Assembly (NCBI RefSeq): GCF_032062105.1
Contig: NW_026928165.1
Location: 62,001-126,000, forward strand
Direction of reading: 5' to 3'
Length of the DNA: 64,000 bases
Source: Saccostrea cucullata
Lineage: Eukaryota
This document shows, piece by piece, positions 14,723-33,207 of this stretch. Position numbers and translations under genes: made by a program. How positions within the stretch are numbered: the stretch's first letter is position 1; each line of letters begins with the position of its first letter. Under the pieces are notes generated by a model that was not told the origin of the DNA, did no database searches, and saw nothing but the letters and a program-made list of their open reading frames with translations.

Positions 14723-17284
14723 AAAGTGGCCACCAGTTTCATAAGTAACGAAAAATAAAATAGAATAAATTTCATTTTTCTCAGTAAATGTCCAAATAAT
14801 TACTTAGAAGCATGAGTTTTTCTATTTCTTTTATTGTTCAAACTGGTTTCTAAAAATGCCCCTGGTATATATTGGTACAAAAGTTTTGTTGGACAATTTT
14901 CAAAAGTATTCATTGGAATAAAAAATGTATACATGGAGTTTTGCAAACTACAAGTACAAAATGTCCCTGGTACCGATATGTAAGTGTCTTTCATAGTTCA
15001 TTGCGTTTAGATATATCCAAAATAGCTGCCTTTGCTACATGTATAGAATTAAAATGAGTCATTCATATCTGAAAATTTAAAATTTTAAAATCATTAAAAT
15101 AATTTTCCTATTAGCTTCCAAATCCAATGCAAACCCACTGGTATCGAGCTTGAAAAATCAGCTTTTGTTGCCTTTTTTTGTTGTTAGTTCTGGTTTTTCG
15201 TTTTCTTTTTTTTTCCCTTTTGAAGAACTACATGATACCCACCATATAATATGGGGAAACTTATAAAAATACAAATTTTGAGAATTTTGTCAGACATTCT
15301 TTGTAAAAAAAATTAATGCTTGGCTGTAGAAGGTAAATATGTGACCAAAACACTAATGGTACAGTTAAATACTTGACATATATTCAAAAATTTGTACACA
15401 GATACATGTAGTACAGCTGCGCTGTGAGATGTTGTTGAAACTAAGAGTTTTACGATTTTAAGCGTTTTCTTTTTTGGGATGGGACTGAATGATTTGAACT
15501 ATTTACTATAAGATTTCATACTAAACATGATATATATTTATTTTCATGAAAAATTAATTAAATGTCAAATAAATTTTTGGTTAATTTTTTTTCGGGGTGT
15601 GTGTGTGTGATAAGTACTAGTATGAGATGCCTATAACTTCACTGTAAAATAAAATTATCGGGTTTATAGTAAAATAACTCTATGAAATAACGGTTTGTGC
15701 GGCGATGAAAAACAATCCCGGTTTATAGCTGAGATACATTTTAATAACATGAAGCAGCGATCCAGTCAAAAGTGCCGAGAAATAAAATAAAAAAAGTACG
15801 TTAATTACTTATTGTTTGGTGTGCACTTTACTTGCTTCAATGTCAATGCTAATGAAACTTTAGTATACTATAGCATATTAAATGTAGTTGCATAATTTTA
15901 AAAAGTTTTTTCACTTAAATTTTTGAAATTAACGAATGGGCTATTATACAGACTAATTTACCCAAGTTCTTTGAATGTTAAGTTTCTTAAGATTTGAAAA
16001 ATCATAGTCCTTGTATTAACCACGGGATACAAATCAATACTGATAAACTACTTGTTGATCAAGAAACGGGTTCAAGTGACAGAAAATCATTGTAGTCAGT
16101 AAAAATTAAGACTCCGGAGAGACGCAGGTTGTGTGATTATCCGACAACCTGTTGCAAGCAGACGTTAGGCGAAATAATAAGATTACAATGACGTCTATGA
16201 TTAAAAGTAATTCATAATTCATAAGAGGCAGTGATGTAAAAGTTAGAAAATTAACAACTTTTGTAAAATGATTGAGATGATGAAAAAATTTTGAAAAACT
16301 TGTCATCAGATGGTCCATTGTATTTTTGATTGACTCTCGTATCAAAAAGATTGAAGTAATAAAATCCAAGTTATGACCCGATAAACATACCATTATCATC
16401 ATTATTATTAGCATCATCATTTTGAAAACTAGAAATCGTTTTGTTGTCCATATCAAACTCTGACAACATGTGAAATCTTCAAAGAATTCTGCATAATGTA
16501 TCAAAATAACGGGATATCATGAAAATCCCGATTATTCAGAAAATGAATGATGCCATCCTTCACATAGACAGAAGGGCGCAAATTGTAAGGTCATAGGTCA
16601 GTGTAATGTAGTTCTTCTTCACGTCTCCAAAATGGGAGAGCTTCTTATCAATCGCATGGTCAATTAACCAGTAAAGAAAGAGGGTGATTTTCAAAACCCA
16701 TTTTATGTATGGTAACCGGTGGATTAATACAAGATAACGAGCCAGTACCAAAACAGGGATTAGAAAAGACAAACGATGGTGGATTCGATATTGTGAGAAG
16801 TATGGCCACTTCACGTTTATCACTCTTATTTTGCAGTTTACGACTTGTGGTTGAAGTTTATATCCATAAAAATGTATGGGAATCTCTGCATCAAACCGAG
16901 CTGTGGATGAGCTTGGATCAATGTATATTACAGTTTCTGTAAACAGGGATTACATTGTCAGACATGTTCTTCCCTTTCATATTTATGTTGCATGAGCAAT
17001 AATATGAGGATTACACAAACTTTTTAGGCGCCGATGGCCTTTGGGGATAAAAATCAATATCTATTTATGATTCAAAACCTGTGTTTATGTTTGAAATAAA
17101 CTTTATAATGTGAAAAAGACATTTAACTTGCCTGGCAAGTGAAATGATTTGTCATTCTTATATTCAAAGCTCTCCAGTGTTGTAGTGTAAAACTTCCCCT
17201 TAGTGAGACTTCTTATGAAAGTCTTGATCTAGAGTGATCGAACCTATCCATAGGGGATGTCTTATTCTAGACCAATACCTCTAG

Positions 17285-20200
17285 CTTAAACAAAACAAGG
17301 TACATTAGCAACTGGTACCACTTACAATACCTATTCGGAATAAGACTAATGAGTGCATCAAAGAATGTCCACTTCTCTCTTTGACCATGCCCGTCATATT
17401 CAACTGAAAAATACAAAATTGATTGATTGATTTATTATGTGTTTTTAACGTCCGTCTCGAGAATTTTTCACTCGTATGGAGACCCACCTAGAAATTAAAA
17501 ATATACAAGAAAGTAATCTTACTGTTTTAAATCTGTGTGCTGCTGACAATTACACTTTGATCGCTGTTGTTTCCTGGCTTTTATCACAGCCAAGATTTAG
17601 TACAAGTCACATTCTGAAGTTTTATAAGTGAGTGGCTCAAAACAGTTTTTTAATCCACTGGGTTTGTTTATAGCATAAACAAAACCAGGGACATTAGCAA
17701 CTGGTACCACTTACACTACCTATTTAGAATGTGACGATTTCATTACAATGTCCATCATTCTTTTTGACCATGCCCTTCACATTCAACTGAAAAATACAAA
17801 ATTGATTGATTGATTATGATGTGTTTTAGCGTCTCTCTCGAGAATTTTTAACTCACAAGGAGACCCAATAAAGAATTAAAAACAGAGAAGAAAATAAACT
17901 TACTGTTTTTAATCTTTGTGCTGCTGACAACTACACTTCGTTCATCATTGTTGATTCTTGGTTTCTATCACAACCAAGATTAAGTACAAATCACATTCTG
18001 AAGTTTTGTGAGTGAGTGGCTCAAAACAGTTTTTTTCAATCCAGTGGGTTTGTTTATAGCATAAACAAAACCAGGGACATTAGCAACTGGTTCCATTCAC
18101 ACTACCAATTCAGAATGTGACTTGAGTACATCAACAGTATCCACTTCTCTCTTGTCTTCAAAAAGTGAAATAGAAGATCGGTGTTGTTTCCTTGAGTGGC
18201 TCGGAACAGTTTTCTAATCCATTGGCTTTCTTTATATCATGCCTCATATTCAACTGAAAAAAAATACACGATTGATTGATTGATAATATTTTGTTTAACG
18301 TTCCTGTCGAGAATTTTTCACTCAAACTGAGACCCAATAAAGATTTAAAAACAGACAAAAAAATAAACTTATTATTTTAAATCTGTGTACTGCTGGCAAG
18401 TAGATCTTGATCGCTGTTGTTTGTTGGTTTCTATCACAGCCAAGATTTAGTACAAGTCACATTCTGAAGTATTATGAGTGAGTGGCTCAAAACAGTTTTT
18501 TAATCCACTGGGTTTGTTTATAGCATAAACAAAACCAGGGACATTTGCAACTGGTACCACTTACACTGTTCAGAATGTGACTTGAGTGCATCAACAATGT
18601 CCAATTCTCTCTCGGACCATGTCCATCATATTCAACTGAAAAATACAAGATTGATTGATTAATGATGTGTTGTTAAGGTCCCTCTCAAGGATTTCTCTCT
18701 CATATGGAGACCCACTAAAGATTTAAAAACAGACAAGAAAATAAACTTACTATCTTAAATCTGTGTACTGCTGACAAGTCGATCTTCATCGCTGTTGTTT
18801 TTATGGTTTCTATCACAGCAAAGATTTAGTACAAGTCACATTCTGAAGTTTTATGAGTGAGTGGCTCAAAACAGGTTTTAATCCACTGGGTTTGTTTATA
18901 TCATAAACAAAACCAGGGACATTTGCAACTGGTACCACTTACACTGTTCAGAATGTGACTTGAGTGCATCAACAATGTCCACTTCTCTCTTTGGCCATGC
19001 CCATCATTTTCAACAGAAAAATACAAGATTGATTGATTAATGATGTGTTGTTTAAGTCCCTGTCGAGATTTTTTCACTCACATTGAGGCCCACTAAAGAT
19101 TTAAAAACAGAGAAGAAAATAAACTTACTATCTTAAATCTGTGTACTGCTGGCAAGTAGACTTTGATCGCTGTTGATTTTTTTTTTCTGTCACAGCCAAG
19201 ATTCAGTACAAGCCACATTCTGAAGTTTTATGAGTAAGTGGCTCAAAACAGTTTTTTAATCCACTGGGTTTGTTTATAGCAAAAACAAAACCAGGGACAT
19301 TAGCAAATGTTACCACTTACACTACCTATTCAGAATGTGACTTGAGTGCATCAACAATGTCCACTTCTCTCTCTGACAATGCCCATCATATTCAACTGAA
19401 AAATACAAGATTGACTGATTAATGATTTGTTGTTTAACGTCCTTGTCGAGAATTTTACACTTAGATGAAGACCCAAGAAAGAATTTAAAAACAGAGAAGA
19501 AAATAAACTTACTGTTTTTAATCTTTGTGCTGCTGACATCTACACTTCGTTGATCGTTGTTGATTCTGGGCCTTTATCACAGCCAAGATTTAGTAAAAGT
19601 CACATTCTGAAGTTTTATGAGTGAGTGGCTCAAAACAGTTTTTTAATCCACTGGGTTTGTTTATAGCATAAACAAAACCAGGGACATTAGCAACTGGTAC
19701 CACTTACACTACCTATTCAGAATGTGACTTGAGTGCATCAACAATGTCCAATTTTCTCTCTGACCATGCCCATCATATTCAACTGGGAAAAAAAATACAA
19801 GATTGATTGATTAATTATGTGTTATTAAAGTTCCCTTTCGAGAATTTCTCACTCTTAGGGAGACTACTAAAGATTTAAAAACAGAGAAGAAAATAAACTT
19901 ACTATCTTAAATCTGTGTACTGCTGGCAAGTAGATCTTGATCGCTGTTGTTTGTTGGTTTCTATCACAGCCAAGATTTAGTACAAGTCACATTCTGAACT
20001 TTTATGAGTGAGTGGCTCAATGCAGTTTTTATCCACTGGGTTTGTTTATAGGATAAACAAAACCAGGGATATTAGCGGTTGGTACCACTTACACTACCTA
20101 TTCAGAATGTGACCTGAGTGCATCAACAATGTCCTATTCTCTCTCTGACCATGTCCATCATATTCAACTGAAAAATACAAGATTGGTTGATTAATGGTGT

Positions 20201-23200
20201 GTTGTTGAAGGTCCCTTTCGAGGATTTTTACTCATATGGAGACCCACTAAAGAAGAAAATAAACTTACTATAATAAATCTGTGTACTGCTGACAAGTCGA
20301 TCTTGATCGTTGTTGTTTGTTGGTTTCTATGACAGCCAAGATTTAGTACAAGTCACATTCTGAAGTTTTATGAGTGAGTGGCTCAAAGCAGTTTTTAATC
20401 CACTGGGTTTGTTTATAGCATAAACAAAATCAGAGACATTAGCAACTGGTACCACTTACACTATTCAGAATGTGACTTGAGTGCATCAACAATGTCCACT
20501 TCTTTCTTTGGCCATGCCCATCATTTTCAACAGAAAAATACAAGATTGATTGATTAATGATGTGTTGTTTAAGTCCCTGTCGAGATTTTTTCACTCACAT
20601 TGAGGCCCACTAAAGATTTAAAAAGAGAGAAGAAAATAAACTTACTATATTAAATCTGTGTACTGCTGGCAAGTAGTTCTTGATCGCTGTTGTTTTATTT
20701 TTTTGGTTTCTGTCACGGCCAAGATTTAGTACAAGTCACATTCTGAAGTTTTATGAGTGAGTGGCTCAAAGCAGTTTTTTAAGCCACTGGGTTTGTTTAA
20801 AGTAGAAACAAAACCAGGGACATTAGCAACTGGTACCACTTACACTACCTATTCAGAATGTGACTTGAGTGCATCAACAATGTCCACTTCTCTCTTTGGC
20901 CATGCCCATCATATTCAACTGAAAAATACAAGATTGATTGATTAATGATGTGTTTATGTTTCCAGTCGAGGATTTCTCACTCATATGGAGACCCACTAAA
21001 GATTTAAAAACAGACAGGAAAATAAACTTACTATCTTAAATCTGTGTACTGCTTGCAAGTAGATCTTGATCGCTGTTGTTTTTATTGTTTCCATCACAGC
21101 CAAGATTTAGTACAAGTCACATTCTGAAGTTTTATGAGTGAGTGGCTCAAAGCAGTTTTTTAATCCACTGGGTTTGTTTATAGCATAAACAAAACCAGGG
21201 ACATTAGCAACTGGTACCACTTACACTACCTATTCAGAATGTGACTTGAGTGCATCAACAATGTCCACTTCTCTCTTTGGCCATGCCCATCACATTCAAC
21301 AGAAAAATACAGGATTGATTGATTAATGATGTGTTTTAAGGTCCCTCTCGAGGATTTCTCTCTCATATGGAGACCCACTAAAGATTTAAAAACAGACAAG
21401 AAAATAAACTTACTATCTTAACTCTGAGTACTGCTGACAAGTCAATCTTGATCGCTGTTGTTTTTATGGTTTCTATCACAGCCAAGATTTAGTACAAGTC
21501 ACATTCTGAAGTTTTATGAGTGAGTGGCTCAAAGCAGTTTTTTAATCCACTGGGTTTGTTTATAGCATAAACAAAACCAGGGACATTAGCAACTGGTACC
21601 ACTTACACTACCTATTCAGAATGTGACTTGAGTGCATCAACAATGTCCACTTCTCTCTTTGGTCATGCCCATCATATTCAACTGAAAAATGCAAGATTGA
21701 TTGATTAATGATGTGTTGTTTAAGGTCCCTGTCGAGAATTTTACACTTAGATGAAGACCCAAGAAAAATTTAAAAACAGAGAAGAAAATAAACTTGCTGT
21801 TTTTAATCTTTGTGCTGCTATCAACTACTCTTCGTTGATTGTTGTTGATTCTGGGCTTTTATCACAGCCAAGATTTAGTAAAAGTCACATTCTGAAGTTT
21901 TATGAGTGAGTGGCTCAAAACAGTTTTTTAATCCACTGGGTTTGTTTATAGCATAAACAAAACCAGGGACATTAGCAACTGGTACCACTTACACTACCTA
22001 TTCAGAATGTGACTTGAGTGCATCAACAATGTCCACTTCTATCTTTGGCCATGCCGATCATATTCAACTGAAAAATACAAGGTTGATCGATTAATGATGT
22101 GTGTTGTTAAAGTTCCCTTTAAAAATAGACAAGAGGATTTCTCACTCTGTATGGAGACCACTAAGGATTTAAAAACAGATAAGAAAATAAACTTACTATC
22201 TTCAATCTGTGTACTAGTGGCAAGTAGATCTTGATCTCTGTTGTTTTTATGGTTTCTATCACAGTCCAGAATTAGTACAAGTCACATTCTGAAGTTTTAT
22301 GAGTGAGTGGCTCAAAGCAGTTTTTTAATCCACTGGGTTTGTTTATAGAATAAACAAAACCAGGGACATTAGCAACTGGTACCACTTACACTACCTATTC
22401 AGAATGTGACTTGAGTGCATCAACAATGTCCACTTCTCTCTTTGGCCATGCCCATCATATTCAACTGAAAAATACAAGATTGATTGATTAATGGTGTGTT
22501 GTTGAAGGTCCCTTTCGAGGATTTTTACTCATATGGAGTCCCACTAAAGATTTAAAAACAGACAAGAAAATAAACTTACTATATTAAATCTGTGTACTGC
22601 TGACAAGTAGATCTTGATCGTTGTTGTTTGTTGGTTTCTATGACAGCCAAGATTTAGTACAAGTCACATTCTGAAGTTTTATGAGTGAGTGGCTCAAAGC
22701 AGTTTTTTAATCCACTGGGTTTGTTTATAGTATAAACAAAACCAGGGACATAAGCAATTGGTACCACTTACACTCCATATTCAGAATGTGACTTGAGTGC
22801 ATCACAGTGTCAATTATTCTCTTTGACCATGCCCTTCATATTCAACAGAAAAATACAAGATTGATTGATTAATGATGTGTTGTTAAAGGTCCCTCTCGAG
22901 GATTTTTACTCATATGGAGACCCACTAAAGATTTAAAAACAGACAAGAAAATAAACTTACTTTCTCAAATCTGTGTACTGCTGGCAAGTAGACCTTGATC
23001 GCTGTTTTTTTTTTGGTTTCTTTCAGAGTTAAGATTTAGTACAAGTCACATTCTGAAGTTTTATGAGTGAGTGGCTCAAAGCAGTTTTTTAATCCACTGG
23101 GTTTGTTTATAGTATAAACAAAACCAGGGACATTAGCAACTGGTACCACTTACACTACCTATTCAGAATGTGACTTGAGTGCATCAACAATGTCCACTTC

Positions 23201-23950
23201 TCTCTTTGGCCATTCCCATCATATTCAACTGAAAAATACAAGATTGATTGATTAATGATGTGTTGTTAAAGGTCCCTCTCGAGGATTTCTCTCTCATATG
23301 GAGACCCACTAAAGATTTTAAAACAGACAAGAAAATAAACTTACTATCTTAAATCTGTGTACTGTTGACAAGTCAATTTTGATCGCTGTTGTTTTTATAG
23401 TTTCTGTCACAGCCAAGATTTAGTACAAGTCACATTCTGAAGTTTTATGAGTGAGTGGCTCAAAGCAGTTTTTTAATCCACTGGGTTTGTTTAAAGCATA
23501 AAAAAGAATAGGGACATTAGCAACAGGTACCGCTTACACTACCTATTCAGAATGTGGCTTGGGTGCATCAACAATGTCCACTTCTCTCTTTGGTCATGCC
23601 CATCATATTCAACTGAAAAATGCAAGATTGATTGATTAATGATGTGTTGTTTAAGGTCCCTCTCGAGAATTTCTCACTCATATGGAGACTCGCTAAAGAT
23701 TTAAAAACAGACAAGAAAATAAACTTACCATTTTAAATCTGTGTACTGCTGGCAAGTAGACTTTGATCGCTGTTGTTTTTTGGTTTCTGTCACAGCCAAG
23801 ATTTAGTACAAGTCACATTCTGAAGTTTTATGAGTGAGTGGCTCAAAACAGTTTTTTAATCCACTTGGTTTGTTTATAGCATTAACAGAAGCAGGGTCAT
23901 AAGCAACTGGTACCACTTACACTACTCATTCAGAATGTGACTTGAGTTCA
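17285..23950. repeat. Tandem array of ~382-bp units (17 complete, one half unit, one internally deleted unit), each with nested inverted repeats and a SINE 3' tail
   Basis: The anchor CAAGTCACATTCTGAA (or a 1-nt variant) recurs at ~17603, 17987, 18453, 18832, 19209, 19596, 19983, 20349, 20732, 21113, 21495, 21880, 22278, 22660, 23042, 23425, 23809. Confidence 0.95.
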
Positions 23951-24370
23951 TACCATAGTCAAAAGCAAGGATATAAGAAGCTGGTATCGTTTTCCTTTTG
24001 CTGTTTTTAGTAAACTTGAAAAGGGAAATATATGTTCCTTTAAAATACATTTTTATGATCTTGACTTTTTTATCATTCCAGTTTGTCAGTGTGTTATATT
24101 TTAGTCCATAAATTGCATTGTTTGTTTATAATGCAAAAAAAAAAATTTCAAATTCAACCATGTGAGAATATATGTTATGAACATAAACAAATCCAAAAAT
24201 TATTCCAGAGAGTATCGCAGTAGGCCTATGATTTTCTCTTGAGTTATCAGAGTTTGGAAAGTCCTACTTGCACTTATTTCATGACAATACATTCAGGCTC
24301 CTCTGAAAACCAGTTTTCTGTATGTAAACAATGCATGAAACGTTGATGATTTCCTGTATTTTTGAATAAA
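17590..24370 (+). ncRNA. Putative spliced non-coding host transcript with repeated 38-nt micro-exons and intronic hairpins
   Basis: Each unit has a pyrimidine tract + CAG, a 38-nt exon and a GTGAGT donor. A further acceptor lies at 24010 and AATAAA at 24365. Joined exons hit a stop in the second copy. Confidence 0.4.
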
Positions 24371-26328
24371 AATTATAAAGATTAAATAAGAACATTGATA
24401 TAAAACGCATTATAATATCTCCAAACCTGTTTTTCTCTTTTATAGACCCCAATTTCTGTTTTTAATAAACCTCTCCTTCTTTCCGTGTATCCAAAGCCTT
24501 CGCGGCCTGCAACTCGTGGTCATGGTAACAGTATCCGGGTTATTTCTATAAGTAACGTTCAGAGCGGATACGGTGTAAAAATCCCGGGATTTTAAGAGAT
24601 ATTTTAAATCATTTTTGAAAATAAAAAAAATCATTAAAAATAATGATAATCAATTACATTTGTAAATATAATTTACGCAACTGATTGATATTAAAAGTAT
24701 TTGCCTTATAAAAAGTAGGTTGATAGAGTAGCGAAAATTGGTCCCTGTTTCAATTTATATACCTCAATACCTGACTTCCATAGAGAAGTCTACATGATCT
24801 TGTCGAACTTAACTTCCTTTTTGTGCGTGATAATTTTATATGCCCCACCTGCATAGCTCGATTGATTAAAAAGTATGGAACATGCGTCGGTAAATTTTTT
24901 ATATATATACTTGTATACTTTAATACCTTCCTATAAAAAAGGTGTGTCAAATATTTAAAAATTGTTTGTTTATCAAAAACAAATGAATTCTTGAAAATTA
25001 AGGACCTTGAATTAGTTGATTTTGCTTGAAGTTGATAGTGCTATCCTATGATTGATACACACAGTGCACTTTTGTAAACTATTCTATTTACTCTACTTGT
25101 ATGTATGCAAAAAAAAAAAAAATCTCCGTAAAAAAAATAGCATTTCTTAAATATTGTTTGTAATAAAAAAAACAAACAGGTAGAATTTGTGAAAATTAAG
25201 AATCTTGAATGTGATGATTCCTTGATAGTGCTCTCCTTTGATGCATCAATCAGGTACCCCTCTGTGTTGCGTGTTGATAACCAATGAATATAACAAATTA
25301 AGAGTTTATATTTCAATTTTGCAAAATATAATTAATTTTAAATGGCGGTGAAACCAACACCAAACATATTTGTGTGAGTCAAACCTGTCTGGATGTTTTC
25401 TTCCTTGCGTATTTTGCTTTTTCTATCTCCGCTCCTTTACACCGTCCGTACCCTTTCGCGCTCCGTAACTCTTTGTTGACATACGGGATCTACTTCCTTG
25501 GTAACCGATTCTCATTCGGAACATCCTCCGTCATTTTCTTACACAAGATACACAACATTTCCGAGTATTTCCGACTGCCTCCTTCATAGACGAGTTATGC
25601 CTCTTTGTATATGTTTTTTTTATTGGCGGATCTAAACTTGTATATAACAGAGTTACAAAAACAATTCTTACAAAGAATATTTATCTCTGTGATATAAAAA
25701 AAACCCCGGAAAGGGTTGTCAAACGGCATTAATTTAGATAAATTTATAAAAAAAATTTTATTTAAGTTAAACATTGTAGCTTGGGTTTCATTTACTTTAT
25801 TGAGGAGGCCAAACTGCAAATTCGCTTTTACCCGCCCCACCTTTTTAAAAACATCCGTTTCAAAGAGATCTTTGACAGCTACAAAGTAAGATTGATGCAA
25901 AGCAACAAATTGACTGCAAATAAAATTATTAAAAAGCTTTTAAGGGATATTTTCAAGACTGAATCAGGCCAAAAAAAAAAAAAATAAATAAATAAAAAAA
26001 TAAGTAAATAAAAAAGAAAAAAGAAAATAAATAAATAACACTGCATTTTAAACATAAGAAACGGTTAAAACATAAGTATTTCAAAATGTATTTAAAGCTA
26101 ATTAAAAAGCTAATTATGAAAAGAAATATAATTGTACACAAATTGCAAAATAATCAGACCCCATGACCATAAACTTAGGATACACATAAATAAGTCACAA
26201 TACCTAGAATTTTAATAAAAAATGTTGAAATAATTTGATGTTCGAATAATATTTAAATTTAAGCAATGAAAATGTTGTTCTTATTACTAGTACAATCAGG
26301 GACCTATATACTAACGTCCCTGGTACTC

Positions 26329-26943
26329 AATGGCGTAGCATCGTTTTTGAAAGGGGGGATTTTTAACATACCTGAAAACAACTTGACAAGTCCAAAAATT
26401 ATTAATACATGTACATGTAATCGTAAATTCTGTTTGACTTTCATTTTTTAAACCCATATAATTTAATTTCAGTTGTAACACGTCATTTGATTGGTTAAAC
26501 GGTTTTATCCATTTTGTATAACATAACTTGCCTACGTCACAATGAGTTACGTCAAAAACGTATTACTCCGCTGGACGTTAACTTTTAAAATATGCTATAT
26601 TTGAAGCCTTTTTCCGAAGGAAAAAATTGGAAAAATTGTATCATTGTCTACATTGAAATTAAATTATAAGGAATGACGCTTATTTCAACTTTTGTTATAC
26701 GATATAACATAACTTGGGGCAGTTTACGCTTTTTTATAAACCGTAAATTGCCCCAAGTTATGTTATATCGTATAACAAAAGTTGAAATAAGCTTCATTCC
26801 TTAAATATACTTTATTACACTGCAACAAAAATGGGAGAGAGGACAGACTTTCAATGAGAATTTTCTATAGTAAAAAAAAATGATGTCTGGAAAAAAAAAG
26901 TGGGAATGGGCAGCCCCCCCCCCCCCCCGTACTACTTGCCTTG
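26329..26943. mobile_element. Degenerate MITE (family of 57859-58220) carrying a nested palindromic element
   Basis: CAATGGCGTAGCATCGTTTTTGAAAG start and poly-C ...CTACTTGCCTTG end match the 57859 element. Confidence 0.5.
26455..26806. mobile_element. Palindromic (Crypton-like) non-autonomous element
   Basis: ~60-bp near-perfect inverted arms at 26667-26803 (TAAGGAATGA...TCATTCCTTA). Confidence 0.55.
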
Positions 26944-27156
26944 ATATGGAACTGAAAAAATATCCCCTCAATTTTGACTTAAAATCTGGTCTCCTTTATA
27001 ATGGGATTGACTTAGACCAGAAATGGGACGACATTAAAACTCTTCAGTGCGCTGGTTTGTTTATCAAAATAAAATAATTCATGACATCAATCATTTTTTT
27101 CAAGTTAGCCTACACTGTCAAATGTATTTTATAACAACCATTCATATACTATTCTC

Positions 27157-27205: not shown

Positions 27206-27304
27206 TAAACGTATATAAATTACTTGTTAAAAATTATTCAAAACAGAAGTACTCTGACCATTGCCTCTCTATGCTATGCTATCCGATTGGACATGAAAAG
27301 GTAG

Positions 27305-27560
27305 TTATCTCGAAAGAATAAGCAATTCAGAATGGCAGTATCTGTCATGGCTTTATTTTGTTTAAGATAGGTTATTACATAATAAATCAATGGTATCAAA
27401 CAATGGACAATGATCAAGTATTATTGCAAGTGTCAATGAGTAAGCGCCGATCCTCAATCTGGCATTTGGCGCCTACGGTTTGCAGAAACGGAGCCATATG
27501 GTGCTGACAACCCTGGAGGGTAAACAGAAGTTGCCAGCGATGGCTTGTTGCAAAATTCTG
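27305..27560 (-). repeat. Ngaro repeat B2 (256 bp; copy B1 at 28045-28300)
   Basis: The two copies appear identical by eye. Confidence 0.92.
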
Positions 27561-27893
27561 TAGTTCGTCGGCATGGATTGCAGCCTGGAAGGATCTCTAA
27601 AGCCATGACGAGGGACGATGTTGCACTGGAATCGGAAATGATAACAGCAGAAACACAGGAGAAAACTAATAATAATTGAATGCACAATATTTATGCCCTA
27701 ACATACCTATGATAAAAATACTATATGTATGCATATCCGCGTACGTAACTGAATAGGGTGATGTATATATGTAAGCAGTTTTTATGGATGACTGGTATAT
27801 GTAAGCAAGTTTTATGGATGATCGGTGTAAAGAAAAAACTGTGTGAATTAGATGAGGAATATTAATCTACATAAAATGGTGGGGGCGGGTGGG

Positions 27894-28300
27894 TGATCAA
27901 AATCGTCGAGCGGAGAGGATGTGTGCGCAAGCGCATTTAAGACTTGGGGCTATTTTGGAAATTTGGTTGAGGACAGGGGAGTTATCGCGCTTAGGCTATT
28001 CTTCTTCGATAACTGGCATTTACCGCACATGGCGGTAAATGCAATTATCTCGAAAGAATAAGCAATTCAGAATGGCAGTATCTGTCATGGCTTTATTTTG
28101 TTTAAGATAGGTTATTACATAATAAATCAATGGTATCAAACAATGGACAATGATCAAGTATTATTGCAAGTGTCAATGAGTAAGCGCCGATCCTCAATCT
28201 GGCATTTGGCGCCTACGGTTTGCAGAAACGGAGCCATATGGTGCTGACAACCCTGGAGGGTAAACAGAAGTTGCCAGCGATGGCTTGTTGCAAAATTCTG
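27894..28300 (-). repeat. Ngaro internal B1-A2 junction
   Basis: A2 (27894-28044) abuts B1 (28045-28300) at GCAA|TTATCT. Confidence 0.92.
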
Positions 28301-28614
28301 CCAAGTGGATTGCTGTGCACGAATTTCGAGACAGCAATCCATCCGCCAACAAGTGGCGGACAATTTGGCAAACAAGACATCATGTCTTATGCAACGCAAT
28401 GATTCTCAAAGCAATACAAAAACAATATGCAGGGTATCATCAATGAATAATGTGGCAAAGCAATATAACACAACATATCAAAGCATCAATCAGCATAACT
28501 GGGGGGAGGGGAGAGGGAAGGATGCAATGCAACTCAGTGCAATTGCGACTACTATCATGAATATGGGATGGTGTGAAGGTGTTTCTTTTACAAGCCATGC
28601 ACAGATACTGTGTT

Positions 28615-29222
28615 TTATGGGAGTGTGGGGAAAACCTTTTCACTTGAAGTCAGAAACTTGGACAATGCCGTTTGAATTGTAGTTGTAAAAATAGAATTTC
28701 CAAGATCTGATAAATGAACACAATCGAGGAATAATTTGGGCTGATCAATTCTAATATCTGGGTAACGAATGAGGGCCCCATTTAACTTTTGCACAACAAA
28801 GCAACCAATGGAATTATTTATTCTTTTTCTAGATTTCTCTGCAGCTTCGCTCGAAATTATGTAACGCCAGTATTTGCGAGGAAGTATATTTGACCATACA
28901 AGAAGAGTGTTTGGTAATTTTTTATGAAGGGAGGCAAATAATGATTTCATGGCTATTTGTAATTTTTTAAGGGACTGAATGCCAATACTGTTGCCACCAC
29001 AGTGAACTATTAGAACTTGAGGAATGATTTCATTATGGCGATTTAACAAACTAGCAATGTGTTGATCAAGTTGCTCCCATTTTAGTCCCCCAGATCCGGA
29101 CCAGGTTACATCTATGTTTAAGTGCTCCAGAGACAAGTTTTGGCCAATTGGTGAACGTGTGCAGTAATCTTCAGCTCGTCTGATGATGGAAGATCCAACA
29201 ATCCATACTTTGCAGCGAGTTC
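28615..29222 (-). CDS. Ngaro SGNH/GDSL-type hydrolase (esterase) ORF
   Basis: VWIVGSS (block I), WSGSGG (II), HCGGN (III), DCVH (V). There is no ATG before block I; the acceptor TTTGCAG ends at 29223. Confidence 0.8.
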
Positions 29223-29258
29223 CTGCAAACTTAGCTTACAGTTAGTAAGACTGACTAT

Positions 29259-30242
29259 CTACAAGACTACAGTATTAGGGCGAACATATGACTTAAAAGC
29301 GTTGGATTTCCATCTACCCATGGTTTTGATTTCTTGCTCTGGAGTACCTTGCATATACAATGAAGTTGCAGCCCCTATGCGAAATGAATGGGATTTGAAT
29401 GTTGATATATCAAGTTTGAGGAATGATAGAGCTTTCTTTAGTATTTGATTGAATTGATAGTAAGTCAAGGGTGAGCCATCCATGTGGCACAGAAACTGTG
29501 ATGTTTGAGTTTGTGATGGTCTATGGGTCGCGTACTCTAGAATGTTGTGGAATAGGACTTGATTGTGCTTTGTACTGTTAATGTGCATTGTTGTGCCCTT
29601 GCCATGCTGATCTGTTTTAGTTTTCCCTAAAGTGATCTGAATGGATGATTGGGATATTGATACATTTTCTATTGATAATGGGGAACTGTGGGTATTTGCC
29701 CTAGTGGTGGTTATTTCACCAACTCGAAGTAAAGCAAAGAATGCGAGCCCATATGCTGAGGAGAACAGTAATTTTTCATAATAATTGCGACACACATGTT
29801 ACAGCGAGTCTATTAACTTGACTAATAGGGGAAATGTTATCGGGCTTCTTGAATCTTTTCTATGTTTTAGTTGTTTAAAGCCATTTAGCATTTTCTTAAC
29901 TATGAAAAATTGGCATGGGTCTGGGAAATTACCAAGTTTTATGTTGAAGCTTAAGCCAGCTAGGTAGGTTTTGGCTGTAGAGTATGTTGTCCCCTTTGAG
30001 GATAGGTAAGCAATATAGTTAATTAATTGGTCTATGGGAGGGGGCCATACTTCTGTTAAGTTAAATTTTTTTCTAAATTGTGCAAATGAGTCAAGACCTT
30101 TCTGGTATATTTCTTGAGTGTTATGAGAGACTGATGCTGAGAGTAGTTGTTCTACTTCCTGCTCAAATGGTTCCAGAATTCCAGAGGAACTTGGCAGGGA
30201 TAATAGTCTGCATGGGGGGCCAGCTTCCTGAACTTTTGCCAC
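29259..30242 (-). pseudogene. Ngaro tyrosine recombinase with one in-frame nonsense codon (TAA 29801-29799)
   Basis: LLRVGE, KTKTDQ, HSFRIGAAT and GRWKSNAFKSY catalytic motifs; DSL*HVCRN reads in one frame. Confidence 0.9.
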
Positions 30243-31742
30243 TGAAAACGAGATATGGCATCAGCTATAGAATTAGAATGACCTGGTACATGTTCGCAGC
30301 GGACTTGGATATTGTATTTTAATATTTTATAAAGAAAAGGCCTGAGGAGGGACATAACTCTTGGTGACTTTGATGTTTTTTGGTTGATTATCTCGACAAC
30401 AGCCATGTTATCAATGTGCAAGATTATTTTTCTGCCTTGTAGTTTGTGGCCCCATATGTATATTGCAAGGGCGACTGGGACTAGCTCCAGATAAGTCAGA
30501 TCTCTACAATCGTGTTGTGACCATTCTGAGGGCCATTGTAGGTAGGACCATTGTGTACCAAATATGACCCCACACCCAAGTGAACCAGAGCTATCAGAGG
30601 ATATGTGAATAGTGTCTTTATCTGACCAGTGAATATCTGGGAATACAGTTGTGCCATTAAAGTCAGACAGGAACTCGAGCCATATATCTACATCTTCGCG
30701 AAGTGCCCTTGAGATAGTGATATAATGGTGTTGTTTGTATCCCTGTGATAGGCTGTCATAAAATCGCCTACAAAAGGCTCTCCCTGCAGGTATTGCCTTA
30801 GAAATAAATGCCAAAGATCCAACTAATGATTGCATTTCTTTAAGAGTAATTTTGCGACGCGAGGCAACGTTTTGAAGTTGGGCTTTAAGGGCGTCGACTT
30901 TATCTTTAGGGACAAATATAGTTTGGGTGATGGTATTAATCCCTAACCCTAGAAATGTTAAACAAGTTGTAGGACCTTCAGTTTTTTCCTCTGACAGAGG
31001 AACGCCGAGCGTTTCACAAGTTATGTCAAATATTTGCATGAGGTTTTTGCACACAAGGGTGTTTGCAGGGCCTGCAAAAAGGAAATCATCAAGGTAGTGT
31101 ACTAATGTGTCAATATTGGCTCGATCTTGAACAATCCAATGGAGGGCTGTTGCAAATTTTTCAAATGTAGCACATGCTATAGAGCAACCGAATGGGAGGC
31201 ACTTATCGAAATAATAGTTGTTAAAATAAAAACCAAGCAAGGAAAAATCCTCGGGGCGAATAGGAAGGAGTCTGAATGCACTAGAAATGTCTTTTTTCCC
31301 CAATAAAGCTCCCTTGCCTAGTTCTTTTATCATTCTTACTGTCGAGTCAAATGATGTATAATGAACGGTGCAGAGATCTGGGTCTATAAAGTCATTAACA
31401 CTATTTCCCTCTGGTGCAGATAAGTTACAAATCATACGCCACCCCCCTTGCTTTTTGGGAACAATGCCTATTGGGCTACACTTGATATTTGACATGGGGA
31501 TATTCTTGAACGGCCCAGCTACTCTACCTAATTTAACCTCTTGATCAATTTTTTTCTTGGAGCTGCTGTGAATTTGTTTGTGCAGATTTCATGTTTTTAG
31601 ATTTTTGATATTCCCGTATACCCGAATAACAAATGTTGAAACCATATTGAAAACCATTGATTAATTCATGAGCAATATGTTGCAAGGGGTAGTCTTTTAG
31701 CATTGATTTTAGGATGTTAACGTTGACTGGGGTTGGGGCCAA
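30152..31742 (-). CDS. Ngaro reverse transcriptase / RNase H; +1 frameshift in an A7 run at 31549-31555
   Basis: APTPVN N-terminus, SPIGIVPKK, LPFGCS, YLDDF; RNase H SDSS..LELVPV..IDNMAV..NSIADAISR. Confidence 0.92.
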
Positions 31743-32772
31743 GTCCCAGAGGCCTTGGTTGGTTTGGGGGGAACCCTCTACTCTGAAATCTGCTTGGGGG
31801 CTGGCGGGGATGTTCGGCTTGGGATGGGCGAAAGTTTTCTGTGCGAAATGCCTGACTGTTGTGCCAGCGGCAGTTTATGAGTGGGTGATTATTGGAGCAT
31901 TTAATGCAAGCATGTTGATAAGTGCAGTATGGTCTTCCGCATGTGCCTTTGTAATTGAAGTCAAAGCATTTTGGCGATTTAGTTGTATAATTTGGGGTTT
32001 GCTGTGATAGAGTGTTGTGGCCATGAGACACATACAAGAGCCATAATTCTGCGTCGACACACCCCCAGTCGAGAGTATGGTTCCTGGAGCGCTTTAGTCT
32101 AAACTGTATGTCATAATTGAGCCAGTTTAAGTTTGATGATCGCTGTGCAGCAGTGCGTATGATGTTAATGTATTTAAGGATTGATTGAATGTGTTCAGGG
32201 AACTTAGTCAAGTAAATGCTGCTGAAAATGAGGAAAGCATTTGTCCATGTTTCAATTGAAGTTATTTTGATTTCTTTATGCTTAGCCTTTAGCACTAATT
32301 CGCCAGCAACAAATGCGAGCTGTTGCTGGGGCTCGTCATTTGGTTTGAGAGGAAGTAATTTATGCAAGTGAATGAATGCATTATCATATATGTTTTGTCT
32401 CAGGTTGTCTGGGACATGGACGCCCAATGCGTCTGAAACGCTACATAATGAATTTGGTGTTGTTGCACTTGAATTAGTTAATGTATTAGTGCTGCCTGAA
32501 GTACCTGTAGATAGCATTGTTGGCGATGCCTCAAACTCTAAGGGGTCAGGGATGTCTATTCCTGAGGAAGTTGTAGGCTGGTTTGATAAGGCTGGAGGTA
32601 TGGCGTCAGGAGTGACCTGGTTCGGTTGAGTCACGGTGCTTGTAGCAGTGGTGACCTGGTTCGGTTGAGTCACGGTGCTTGGAGGCCTGGATGCTTTGGC
32701 CTTTTTGGTGGCAGCTGGAGCTCGGCCGGGCCTGGCATATGGAGACTTTGTAGTCCTTTTTGCACGGAGCAT
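31717..32772 (-). CDS. Ngaro gag-like ORF1
   Basis: SIETWTNAFLIF, WLNYDIQFR and C-terminal CFDFNYKGTC..C..HAC..C...H....C zinc knuckle; overlaps the RT start. Confidence 0.85.
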   Translation of the reverse strand: MLRAKRTTKSPYARPGRAPAATKKAKASRPPSTVTQPNQVTTATSTVTQPNQVTPDAIPPALSNQPTTSSGIDIPDPLEFEASPTMLSTGTSGSTNTLTNSSATTPNSLCSVSDALGVHVPDNLRQNIYDNAFIHLHKLLPLKPNDEPQQQLAFVAGELVLKAKHKEIKITSIETWTNAFLIFSSIYLTKFPEHIQSILKYINIIRTAAQRSSNLNWLNYDIQFRLKRSRNHTLDWGCVDAELWLLYVSHGHNTLSQQTPNYTTKSPKCFDFNYKGTCGRPYCTYQHACIKCSNNHPLINCRWHNSQAFRTENFRPSQAEHPRQPPSRFQSRGFPPNQPRPLGLGPNPSQR

Positions 32773-33207
32773 GTTTCTATAAAACAAACAACTGTGTAAC
32801 TTGTGTTTAACATATACATAATTTATTATTATTATTATTAATTGCTTATATATTTATAAATTTTTACTATTAATGTTTTTTTTTTTTTATTTTTTTATTT
32901 TTTGTTTGAATCTGAGATTGTGAATTATTAACATCGTTTACTAATTATGAATGATCAAATTATATGTAGAGTTAAAGCCCTTTTGTTTAACGTTTGGCAT
33001 GCCGCCATTAACGGATGGTGATGATGAATATTGATCCAGCAAAATCTGCTGACATCTTAAGTGCTGAGGCAAGGGAAACGCCCAATTCGCTTCCAATGCT
33101 CACTAGATGTTTAATACATACCGATGACCGGTGGAACGATACCTGTACAATATAGTAATCCACGTAATGGGTTGCAACTTGGAGGTGATTTTTCTGTTGA
33201 TACTGTC

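What the first reader, a model, noticed from the sequence alone, without database searches (positions are those of the whole stretch)
17285..24370. Tandem 'micro-exon + splice-donor hairpin' cassette array: candidate C19MC-like intronic hairpin/miRNA cluster
Seen: the ~382-bp unit (17 complete copies) is not a featureless satellite. On + it reads, for unit 11: branch-like TGCTGAC and a U-rich tract ending CAG (21481), a 38-nt exon (21482-21519), a GTGAGT donor (21520), an 87-nt hairpin whose first base is the donor G (GTGAGTGG pairs with CCACTTAC, 21520-21606; upper stem CAGTT/AACTG, TAAT/ATTA, CTGG/CCAG, TTTGTTTAT/ATAAACAAA), then a SINE tail and the next acceptor. A strong acceptor follows the last unit (24010) with AATAAA at 24365. 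Joined 38-nt exons hit a stop in the second copy, so the product would be non-coding. Known: primate C19MC is built from repeated short exon + intronic pre-miRNA + Alu units, and 3'-tailed mirtrons such as fly mir-1017 start at the 5' splice site. Inference: a lineage-specific, SINE-associated small-RNA cluster amplified ~10 kb from snail.
Basis: partly seen in the sequence, partly recalled or inferred. Interest (0 to 1): 0.9.

Follow-up and report, generated by a model that had tools for sequence, protein, structure and literature searches.

The report
Dispersed oyster hairpin-repeat array family
The 6.7-kb tandem repeat upstream of snail is real, but it is one of about 33 similar "conserved head plus hairpin-repeat array" loci scattered through this oyster genome, and nothing supports the proposed plus-strand micro-exon/mirtron design, although the hairpin itself is unusually well conserved.

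Summary
Observation confirmed.

Interpretation only partly supported:
- The 87-nt hairpin is the inner part of a 136-144-nt imperfect palindrome. It swallows the last 25 nt of the "38-nt exon" and folds equally well on both strands.
- The array is not locus-specific. I collected 423 units from 32 loci. About 33 genome loci carry the same non-coding flank (23952 to about 26395 here), always on the same side of an array.
- That flank holds two ultra-conserved blocks and a TATA box that points at the array on the MINUS strand.
- The one RNA data set shows no exon-exon junction inside the array. Its single canonical junction is minus-strand, running from the flank into the last unit.
- Splice-like motifs occur on both strands. 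They are kept no better than the conserved block around them.
- There is no Rfam, tRNA or ribozyme match.

The hairpin block (0.06 against 0.23 divergence between arrays) and the head core (0.12 against 0.26) are clearly constrained. I cannot tell a transposon-like composite satellite, which is typical of oysters, from a transcribed multi-hairpin RNA gene family. The scan noted what is probably the same family on other DNA (s1-716618). No small RNA has been shown.

The parts
17282..23951 (.). Tandem array. It begins with a partial unit that starts in the palindrome loop, continues with 15 near-complete units plus rearranged unit 2 of about 366-397 bp, and ends with a partial unit that stops just after the palindrome.
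   Evidence: Unit identities are 83-96%.
21353..21738 (.). Reference unit (unit 11), used as the frame for the family profile. Profile position is roughly the coordinate minus 21352.
21491..21636 (.). Imperfect palindrome of unit 11, with outer stem 21495-21510 / 21615-21630. It is the conserved block of the unit together with about 15 nt upstream.
21520..21606 (+). GTGAGT at 21520 lies in the second helix.
21482..21519 (+). Its last 25 nt are the 5' arm of the outer stem.
21318..21384 (.). Spacer between cores. It is a head fragment of an unrelated interspersed repeat. It is found in this array and in a minority of the others, and is absent from most arrays of the family.
   Evidence: Loose ends.
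23952..26395 (-). Shared non-coding flank ('head') that accompanies an array of this family at about 33 loci, always on this side. Its right end is unresolved: a MITE-like element follows at 26458 and a DIRS-like element at 27303.
24346..24610 (-). Ultra-conserved head core (strongest at 24466-24606). It is non-coding and does not fold on either strand.
24437..24444 (-). TATAAAAG on the minus strand, on the array side of the core and kept in nearly all copies. The start site predicted from it is near 24410 (inference).
23864..24273 (-). Minus-strand intron seen in one RNA-library contig. The donor is AAATAA|GTGCAAGT and the acceptor is AG|TGGATT inside the palindrome of the last unit. The donor GT is specific to this copy.
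25270..25650 (.). Second conserved non-coding block of the head, with stop codons in all six frames in all copies.
25971..26038 (.). A-rich / (AAAT)n microsatellite inside the head. It is not the end of the element, because homology to other copies resumes after it.

Best explanation
The array is one copy of a dispersed, non-coding composite repeat family of the kind that dominates oyster satellite DNA. It has a conserved 'head' and a run of tandem units.

Head: at least 2.4 kb, at 23952 to about 26395 here, with two ultra-conserved boxes.

Units: 6 to at least 28 tandem units of 305-390 bp, each built around a conserved palindrome of about 140 nt.

Shown:
- About 33 loci exist.
- Head and array keep a fixed relative orientation.
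- The far side of this array is unique DNA.
- The arrays show higher-order repeats.
- The palindrome block and the head core are strongly conserved against variable spacers.

Inferred:
- The head-plus-array unit spread as a non-autonomous mobile element. Its class is unresolved; Helitron/Helentron-type is the local precedent.
- The arrays then grew and shrank in place by unequal exchange.
- The head boxes and the palindrome are the cis-acting parts that the element lineage must keep.
- The micro-exon, donor and acceptor 'grammar' is a by-product of the palindrome and of AT-rich spacers.
- If the locus is transcribed, it is from the TATA-bearing head on the minus strand across the array. That would give an RNA with one long hairpin per unit, a natural substrate for small-RNA silencing pathways.
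For: - Family size and layout. I collected 423 units in 32 fetched loci. The head core has 35 genome matches, all of them scored. In 12 of 13 newly fetched head copies an array lies directly beside the head in the same orientation.
- The left flank is unique.
- Higher-order periods of 2x and 3x the unit occur in other arrays. This array shows a weak 6-unit periodicity.
- Conserved block against the rest of the unit, between arrays: 0.062 against 0.230, with 54/151 against 128/150 variable columns, p = 3e-19. Within arrays the block is lower in 18 of 18 when gaps are counted and in 16 of 18 for substitutions only (0.033 against 0.070).
- Head core against other alignable flank: 0.124 against 0.260, lower in 78 of 78 pairs.
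- The palindrome behaves as a DNA-level inverted repeat. The two strands have equal folding energies. There is no G.U against A.C bias (139 against 164 events, p = 0.17). Unpaired positions are as conserved as paired ones.
- No ORF or Pfam domain in the head.
- Literature: oyster satellites are short, scattered arrays that are mostly tied to conserved boxes of Helitron/Helentron elements, often on one side only (PMC7492417, PMC8268682).
Against: - I found no transposon hallmark: no target-site duplication, no terminal inverted repeats, no shared terminal hairpin, no coding partner. The right end of the element is unresolved.
- The HINE-type 60-bp right flank after the last repeat is absent here, because the adjoining 106 nt are unique in the genome.
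- There are only about 33 copies, mostly 72-88% identical in the best-kept block. There is no burst of near-identical copies, which is unusual for an active transposon.
- Head core and hairpin evolve about half as fast as their surroundings even in the closest pairs. That fits selection on each locus as well as it fits constraint on a master lineage.
- A TATA box directed at the array and a spliced minus-strand contig from this locus look gene-like.
Confidence: 0.45

Rival explanations
1. This is a host non-coding RNA gene family. Each of the roughly 33 loci would be a Pol II gene whose TATA-bearing head drives minus-strand transcription (in window terms) through the array. Every unit would contribute one conserved hairpin of about 140 nt, which is processed into small RNAs. 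It would work like the Drosophila tandem hpRNA cluster hp-CG4068 or a multi-copy miRNA cluster. This is essentially the reading of the earlier finding s1-716618.
For: - Two separate modules, head core and hairpin block, are kept while everything between them drifts or becomes unalignable.
- A conserved TATAAAAG lies on the array side of the core.
- One canonical minus-strand junction runs from the head (donor at 24274) into the first hairpin unit.
- Conservation within the hairpin has a saddle shape: the arms differ by 0.01-0.04 and the apex by 0.16-0.19, and the apex carries a compensated pair.
- Bulges and internal loops are conserved, so they have not been erased by arm-to-arm repair.
- The copy number is low and there is no young burst.
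- Family sequences are present at high word depth in an RNA library.
- Tandem hairpin RNA clusters on one transcript are known (PMC10317233).
Against: - No small RNA has been shown.
- The RNA run consists of contigs of a metatranscriptome, and DNA carry-over cannot be excluded. Depth scales roughly with copy number.
- The minus-strand donor GT is peculiar to this copy.
- The hairpin shows no strand-specific wobble signature.
- Unpaired positions are as conserved as paired ones.
- No in-array junctions were seen. In-unit splice-like signals on the minus strand are kept in only 50% of units.
- There is no match to any Rfam family.
- The apical loop is 3 nt and the stem is about 54 bp, which is unlike typical animal pre-miRNAs (established knowledge).
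Confidence: 0.3
2. A plus-strand host transcript is spliced from 38-nt micro-exons, with the hairpin as an intronic pre-miRNA or 3'-tailed mirtron that starts at the donor G. It would be a C19MC-like cluster specific to the snail neighbourhood.
For: - All the motifs are present.
- The 38-nt spacing is kept in 397 of 423 units, and AG plus GTRAGT together in 76%.
- The hairpin is stable and conserved.
Against: - The helix extends 25 nt into the 'exon', so the donor is not at the base of the hairpin.
- A mirror donor sits on the other strand.
- The motifs are no better kept than the surrounding block. The acceptor is deleted in the consensus of one array and the donor is GTTTGT in two.
- No junction of about 344 nt appears in the RNA contigs.
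- The family has about 33 loci.
- The only conserved promoter-like element lies downstream on the plus strand and points the other way.
- A run of six T inside each hairpin on the plus strand is irrelevant to Pol II but excludes Pol III.
Confidence: 0.04
3. This is a neutral satellite with no cis or trans function. The palindrome block looks conserved only because palindromes attract breaks and gene conversion, which homogenises that segment within arrays and between loci.
For: - There is no strand bias, and paired and unpaired positions are equally conserved.
- Compensated pairs can arise by arm-to-arm template switching.
- Concerted evolution is evident: arrays are far more homogeneous than loci are to each other.
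Against: - The asymmetric bulges and loops of the palindrome are retained in all subfamilies instead of being repaired towards a perfect repeat.
- The conserved block has sharp edges, at about profile positions 128 and 278.
- An unrelated, non-palindromic head core shows the same excess conservation in 78 of 78 pairs.
Confidence: 0.12

Closest known systems
Helitron/Helentron-associated satellite arrays of oysters (Cg_HINE, CgiSat families; PMC7492417, PMC8268682)
   Same: - Oyster host.
- Short arrays of units of some hundreds of bp, scattered over many loci.
- Fixed orientation of the repeats relative to conserved flanking boxes.
- A microsatellite inside the flank.
- Arrays often tied to a box on one side only.
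- Non-coding.
   Different: - The flank here is at least 2.4 kb, with two boxes of 140-380 bp.
- No 60-bp right flank with sub-terminal repeat and palindrome follows the last unit, because the adjoining DNA is unique.
- No shared terminal hairpin or TT insertion site could be shown.
- There are about 33 copies rather than hundreds or thousands.
- The units are 305-390 bp, and each contains its own conserved 140-nt palindrome.
- There is no exact match to the C. gigas satellitome supplements.
Drosophila tandem hairpin-RNA cluster hp-CG4068 (PMC10317233)
   Same: - Many tandem copies of one hairpin unit, 9-20 per locus in flies and 6 to at least 28 here.
- Copy number varies between loci or species.
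- The hairpins are much longer than a pre-miRNA.
- The copies are thought to lie on one primary transcript.
   Different: - The fly cluster is a single locus with proven Dicer-2-dependent siRNAs and a known target (mus308).
- Here there are about 33 loci, no small-RNA evidence and no known target.
- The helix here is interrupted by conserved bulges.
Primate C19MC miRNA cluster
   Same: Tandem units that each carry one hairpin, with fragments of an interspersed repeat between units.
   Different: - C19MC is one imprinted locus with intronic pre-miRNAs of about 80 nt and proven spliced host exons.
- Here the family has many loci and the palindrome is about 140 nt and overlaps the supposed exon.
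- No junction reads were found, and the repeat fragment is present in only some arrays.
Mouse L1 5' monomer arrays (established knowledge)
   Same: A variable number of tandem monomers of about 200-400 bp at one end of a dispersed element, with the outermost monomer truncated at variable positions and a unique sequence beyond.
   Different: - L1 monomers sit upstream of coding ORFs and act as promoters.
- Here the partner sequence is non-coding, the conserved TATA lies in the flank rather than in the units, and no poly(A) end or target duplication was found.

Membership tests
C19MC-like intronic miRNA cluster | Spliced host transcript: exon-exon junctions joining the short exons of successive units. 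| tested here: not met
   RNA run X1 was laid on 18401-24400 and 17 joints were reported (15 listed). None is GT..AG with a skip of about 344 nt. This is a single small metatranscriptome held as contigs, so absence is weak evidence.
C19MC-like intronic miRNA cluster | A hairpin of pre-miRNA size (about 60-90 nt) lying wholly inside the intron. | tested here: not met
   The helix is 136-144 nt, and its outer stem uses 25 nt of the proposed exon.
C19MC-like intronic miRNA cluster | A single lineage-specific locus. | tested here: not met
   About 33 loci carry the head. Arrays lie on at least 20 contigs.
C19MC-like intronic miRNA cluster | Discrete 22-nt RNAs from both arms with 2-nt 3' overhangs. 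| not testable with these tools
   No small-RNA run was offered.
3'-tailed mirtron | The first base of the hairpin is the G of the 5' splice site. | tested here: not met
   The GT at 21520 lies in the second helix. Sixteen perfectly paired bases and an internal loop lie further out.
   No Rfam match in the array at E up to 1. The small hairpin at 21430-21505 has z = -0.6. TATCACAGCCA is intact in only 55% of units, and in 0-6% of units in four arrays (L014, L017, L020, L030).
Oyster HINE / Helentron-borne satellite | Short arrays at many loci, in fixed orientation relative to conserved flanking boxes. | tested here: met
Oyster HINE / Helentron-borne satellite | A right flank of about 60 bp, with a sub-terminal inverted repeat and a palindrome, directly after the last repeat. 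| tested here: not met
   The DNA beyond the array's free end is unique in the genome, both for 1483 nt and for 106 nt at E up to 10. Other arrays show no common motif at their free ends.
Oyster HINE / Helentron-borne satellite | A left flank with a 5' sub-terminal repeat, its inverted partner and a microsatellite; insertion at TT without target duplication. | tested here: inconclusive
   An A-rich microsatellite lies in the flank at 25971-26038.
Tandem hpRNA cluster (hp-CG4068 type) | Tandem long hairpins on one primary transcript. | tested here: inconclusive
   The DNA layout fits. Evidence for a transcript is one minus-strand spliced contig, plus family contigs in an RNA library that may contain DNA.
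Tandem hpRNA cluster (hp-CG4068 type) | Dicer-dependent 21-nt siRNAs and a complementary target gene. | not testable with these tools
   No small-RNA data are available. A target search was not attempted.
Retrozyme / hammerhead-bearing satellite | A self-cleaving ribozyme motif in each unit. | tested here: not met
   No ribozyme family matches at E up to 1 over 15000-27000.
tRNA-derived SINE | A tRNA-like head in the unit. | tested here: not met
   ARAGORN finds nothing in 17000-26500. The spacer is a fragment of another interspersed repeat whose class I did not determine.

The most novel reading that the evidence does not exclude
The roughly 33 head-plus-array loci would be an undescribed oyster gene family under selection at each locus. 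Each would be a Pol II promoter driving a long RNA that carries up to about 30 copies of one conserved 140-nt hairpin, more than 500 hairpins genome-wide. These would yield an abundant lineage-specific small RNA, and the copy upstream of snail would be just one member.
Probability: 0.3. Interest if true: 0.75.

Novelty: new variant of a known kind. Interest (0 to 1): 0.42.

Why it matters
As a miRNA/mirtron cluster next to snail, the finding would have been striking. That reading does not hold.

What remains is still more than an ordinary satellite. It is a low-copy, genome-wide family in which a promoter-like head and a long hairpin repeated in tandem are both kept, while the DNA between them decays.

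If the family is mobile, it adds a new architecture to the transposon-borne satellites that shape bivalve genomes. That architecture is a large boxed head with the array at one end and a palindrome in every unit.

If it is a transcribed hairpin-RNA family, it would be one of the largest tandem small-RNA precursor families outside flies and vertebrates, and it would be directly testable with existing oyster small-RNA methods.

For annotation, it warns that palindromes containing GTGAGT/ACTTAC generate convincing but spurious splice 'grammar' on both strands.

Tried and rejected
- Rfam scan of 15000-27000 at E up to 1. Nothing in the array or head. The hits at 26663-26806 belong to a separate MITE-like palindrome.
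- ARAGORN on 17000-26500: no tRNA.
- miR-2-like reading of TATCACAGCCA: rejected.
- Plus-strand RNA preference, as claimed in note s1-732164: rejected. Energies are equal on the two strands, and G.U against A.C events are 139 against 164.
- Poly(A)/retroposon reading of the A-rich run at 25971-26038: rejected, because other copies stay homologous beyond it.
- A candidate target duplication CAATACCT at 17270 and 26199: rejected, because homology with a sister copy runs past it.
- A sharp homology edge at the minus-strand donor (24274), suggested: an artefact of search sensitivity.
- Shared terminal hairpin in the flanks: none.
- Coding potential of the flank: none.
- Structured RNA in the head core: z above 0 on both strands.
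- Inverted repeat between the two head boxes: none.
- Exact-sequence searches of the C. gigas satellitome supplements, of all held papers and of metagenome contigs: all blank and uninformative.
- Earlier-findings look-up by sequence: blank.

Full report
OBSERVATION

The tandem array is real. Tandem Repeats Finder reports 17282-18153 (period 381) and 18244-23951 (period 382, 14.9 copies, 88% matches). A conserved 29-mer anchor recurs 17 times at 366-466-bp spacing. A profile built from the units places a partial first unit at 17282-17461, then 15 near-complete units plus rearranged unit 2, and a last partial unit at 23670-23951. No family pieces lie elsewhere in the window. The 87-nt hairpin folds at -29.3 kcal/mol, z = -4.7. 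Units are 83-96% identical, the edge units are the most diverged, and there is a weak 6-unit periodicity.

First, the hairpin is larger than described. A perfect 16-bp outer stem (21495-21510 with 21615-21630) encloses it. The element is a 136-144-nt imperfect palindrome of -55 kcal/mol, z = -7, and it folds as well on the minus strand (-55.2) as on the plus strand (-55.0). Twenty-five of the 38 'exon' bases are the 5' arm of that outer stem. The 'donor' GT therefore lies inside the second helix, not at the base of the hairpin. Because the element is a palindrome, the partner of GTGAGTGG (CCACTTAC) reads GTAAGTGG on the other strand, which is an equally good donor look-alike.

Second, the repeat is genome-wide. 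A search of the window's own genome (1.17 Gb) gave at least 280 unit matches on many contigs, with only 20 of 111 candidate regions scored. I fetched 34 further stretches and collected 423 units of at least 230 nt from 32 loci. Array periods range from about 305 to 390 bp, and 2x and 3x higher-order periods occur in several arrays. All arrays share a core of about 310 bp. It is a head fragment of an unrelated interspersed repeat that occurs at many loci without arrays (loose ends).

THE LOCUS IS COMPOSITE

The DNA left of the array is unique in the genome, both for 1483 nt and for the adjoining 106 nt even at E up to 10. The DNA to the right is repeated. In 12 of 13 newly fetched copies of that flank, an array of the same family lies directly beside it, in the same relative orientation. 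The same holds for the arrays fetched first.

The flank is non-coding. With sensitive alignment it is shared from about 24050 to 24870 and from 25270 to 25650, with weaker stretches out to about 26395. It contains two ultra-conserved blocks, 24346-24610 (strongest at 24466-24606) and about 25390-25560. The first block has 35 matches in the genome, all of them scored, which means about 33 loci.

The A-rich microsatellite at 25971-26038 is internal, not a terminus. The outer end of the flank could not be fixed. I found no target duplication, terminal inverted repeat or shared terminal hairpin.

CONSERVATION

Across the consensus sequences of 22 non-duplicate arrays, the block at profile 128-278 (the palindrome plus about 15 nt upstream) differs by 0.062 per site. 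The rest of the core differs by 0.230. Variable columns number 54/151 against 128/150 (p = 3e-19).

Within arrays the block is less diverged in 18 of 18 arrays. The difference persists when only substitutions are counted and CpG sites are excluded (0.033 against 0.070; lower in 16 of 18 arrays, the other two about equal). Higher-order repeat structure means the within-array figure is not fully independent of the between-array one.

The head core shows the same pattern: 0.124 against 0.260 for the other alignable flank, lower in 78 of 78 pairs, including the closest ones.

This excess conservation is the strongest reason not to dismiss the locus as an inert satellite. It does not by itself distinguish selection at each locus from constraint on the lineage of a slowly transposing element.

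THE HAIRPIN AS STRUCTURE

On 111 units sampled from 26 loci, 91.7% of cells form standard pairs. Two pairs show well-populated changes on both sides (UA/GC 49:35 and UA/CG 47:36), and both separate the same two subfamilies. Intermediates exist for each.

There is no strand signature:
- Mean folding energy over 411 units is -51.1 on the plus strand against -50.5 on the minus strand.
- One-sided transitions that give G.U on the plus strand against those that give A.C (which is G.U on the minus strand) number 139 against 164 array-by-pair events, p = 0.17.
- Unpaired positions are as conserved as paired ones.
- The asymmetric bulges are kept in all subfamilies.

So the sequence of each arm is constrained, not merely complementarity. 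Conservation inside the block is saddle-shaped: the arms differ by 0.01-0.04 and the apex by 0.16-0.19.

SPLICING AND TRANSCRIPTION

On the plus strand, the AG is kept in 91% of 423 units, GTRAGT in 83%, both in 76%, and the 38-nt spacing in 397 of 423. That is what 3-6% divergence of the block predicts for short motifs. One array has the acceptor region deleted in its consensus and two have GTTTGT.

These are kept in 61% and 82% of units, and both together in 50%. Neither strand stands out.

Only one RNA run held the stretch, a 2019 metatranscriptome kept as contigs. When it was laid on 18401-24400, 561 short contigs matched at 88% or better. High word depths belong to contigs that carry the majority-subfamily variants, so they come from other copies. 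Depth scales roughly with copy number, so DNA carry-over cannot be excluded.

No joint inside the array is canonical on either strand. The joints listed are explained by contigs from other arrays that align only at the conserved blocks. One joint is canonical, and it is minus-strand: 24274 joined to 23863, with skipped ends CT..AC. That is donor AAATAA|GTGCAAGT in the head and acceptor AG|TGGATT inside the palindrome of the last unit. The donor GT is peculiar to this copy, so it shows minus-strand transcription of this locus rather than a conserved gene structure.

On the array side of the head core, the minus strand carries TATAAAAG (24444-24437), which is kept in nearly all copies. The core itself does not fold on either strand. 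A start near 24410 is an inference.

COMPARISON WITH KNOWN THINGS

There is no Rfam family, including miRNAs and ribozymes, in the array or head at E up to 1, and no tRNA. The miR-2-like 11-mer noted earlier is intact in only 55% of units, sits in a hairpin with z = -0.6, and is nearly absent from four arrays.

Oyster satellite DNA is known to consist of short arrays scattered over the genome. Most are tied to conserved boxes of Helitron/Helentron non-autonomous elements, often on one side only (PMC7492417, PMC8268682). The present family shares that general pattern, but it lacks the 60-bp right flank and other termini that define HINEs. It also has a much larger boxed head, few copies, and a palindrome in every unit.

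The closest functional analogue for tandem long hairpins is the Drosophila hp-CG4068 cluster, with 9-20 tandem hairpins on one transcript and proven siRNAs (PMC10317233).

It reads it as about 30 non-coding genes with a promoter-like head and over 570 hairpin copies. That note made me test the flank and the minus strand. My own tests support the head-plus-array layout and the conservation, but not yet the claims of exons or of small-RNA output.

VERDICT

The plus-strand micro-exon / mirtron / C19MC-like reading is not supported, and the link to snail is incidental. Snail lies on the minus strand at about 5118-7158, so the array is 10 kb upstream of it and is one of about 33 such loci.

The best-supported description is a dispersed composite repeat: a conserved head plus a palindrome-bearing tandem array. 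My probabilities are:
- 0.45 for a transposon-like satellite family whose head boxes and palindrome are cis-acting;
- 0.30 for a transcribed multi-hairpin RNA gene family;
- 0.12 for a neutral satellite homogenised at its palindrome;

Small-RNA data, stranded long-read RNA and cross-species synteny would decide between them.

Noticed in passing
window 27303-33000 (minus-strand ORFs 29259-29795, 29799-30242, 30152-31495, 31717-32787): A DIRS-like retroelement: reverse transcriptase and RNase H-like domains plus a tyrosine recombinase (Phage_integrase and SAM-like domains). At least 14 copies elsewhere in the genome are 99% identical, so it was active very recently. It truncates or abuts the shared flank of the array family.
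   Followed up: partly
window 26458-26808 (palindrome 26663-26806): A MITE-like element of about 350 bp, with copies 93-94% identical on at least four other contigs. Its near-perfect 144-nt palindrome gives sub-threshold hits to many Rfam miRNA models on both strands (MIR7533, MIR5998, mir-8536, mir-2009, mir-980), which is a typical false positive for a long AT-rich inverted repeat.
   Followed up: partly
window 23864-24273, minus strand: One RNA-library contig (depth about 5) joins 24274 to 23863 with canonical minus-strand GT..AG ends. A cryptic exon in the shared flank is therefore spliced into the palindrome of the last repeat unit. The donor GT exists only in this copy of the flank.
   Followed up: partly
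window 18108-18311 (unit 2): Unit 2 is 466 bp long because of an internal rearrangement. It contains an extra partial copy of the left palindrome arm (profile 168-214) and of the unit tail.
   Followed up: no
window 827-2164, minus strand: A 445-aa open frame with a reverse-transcriptase domain (RVT_1, E = 3e-11). It lies 3' of the snail zinc-finger exon (5118-5927, minus strand) and is another retroelement fragment in the snail neighbourhood.
   Followed up: no
L013:2337-3399 (G000:C15900:7337-8399): A different satellite of 168-bp period (6.3 copies, 91% matches) sits between two blocks of the 380-bp family on that contig.
   Followed up: no
L042:2707-2746 (positions 2182-2221 of the flank downstream of the array; G000:C10335, about 24707-24746) and its sister copy L043: A 19-bp-stem hairpin (TTAGCTTGGCTTTCTTT..AAAGAAAGCCAAGCTAA) lies about 2.2 kb from the array in one copy of the flank. 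In the near-identical sister copy it is interrupted in the middle of the stem by a sequence that looks retroelement-derived (not tested). It is not shared by other family members.
   Followed up: no
L017/L020, L035/L037, L040/L041, L042/L043: Pairs of loci on different contigs are 95-97% identical through array and flanks. They are probably haplotigs or very recent segmental duplicates. I counted each pair once in the statistics.
   Followed up: partly
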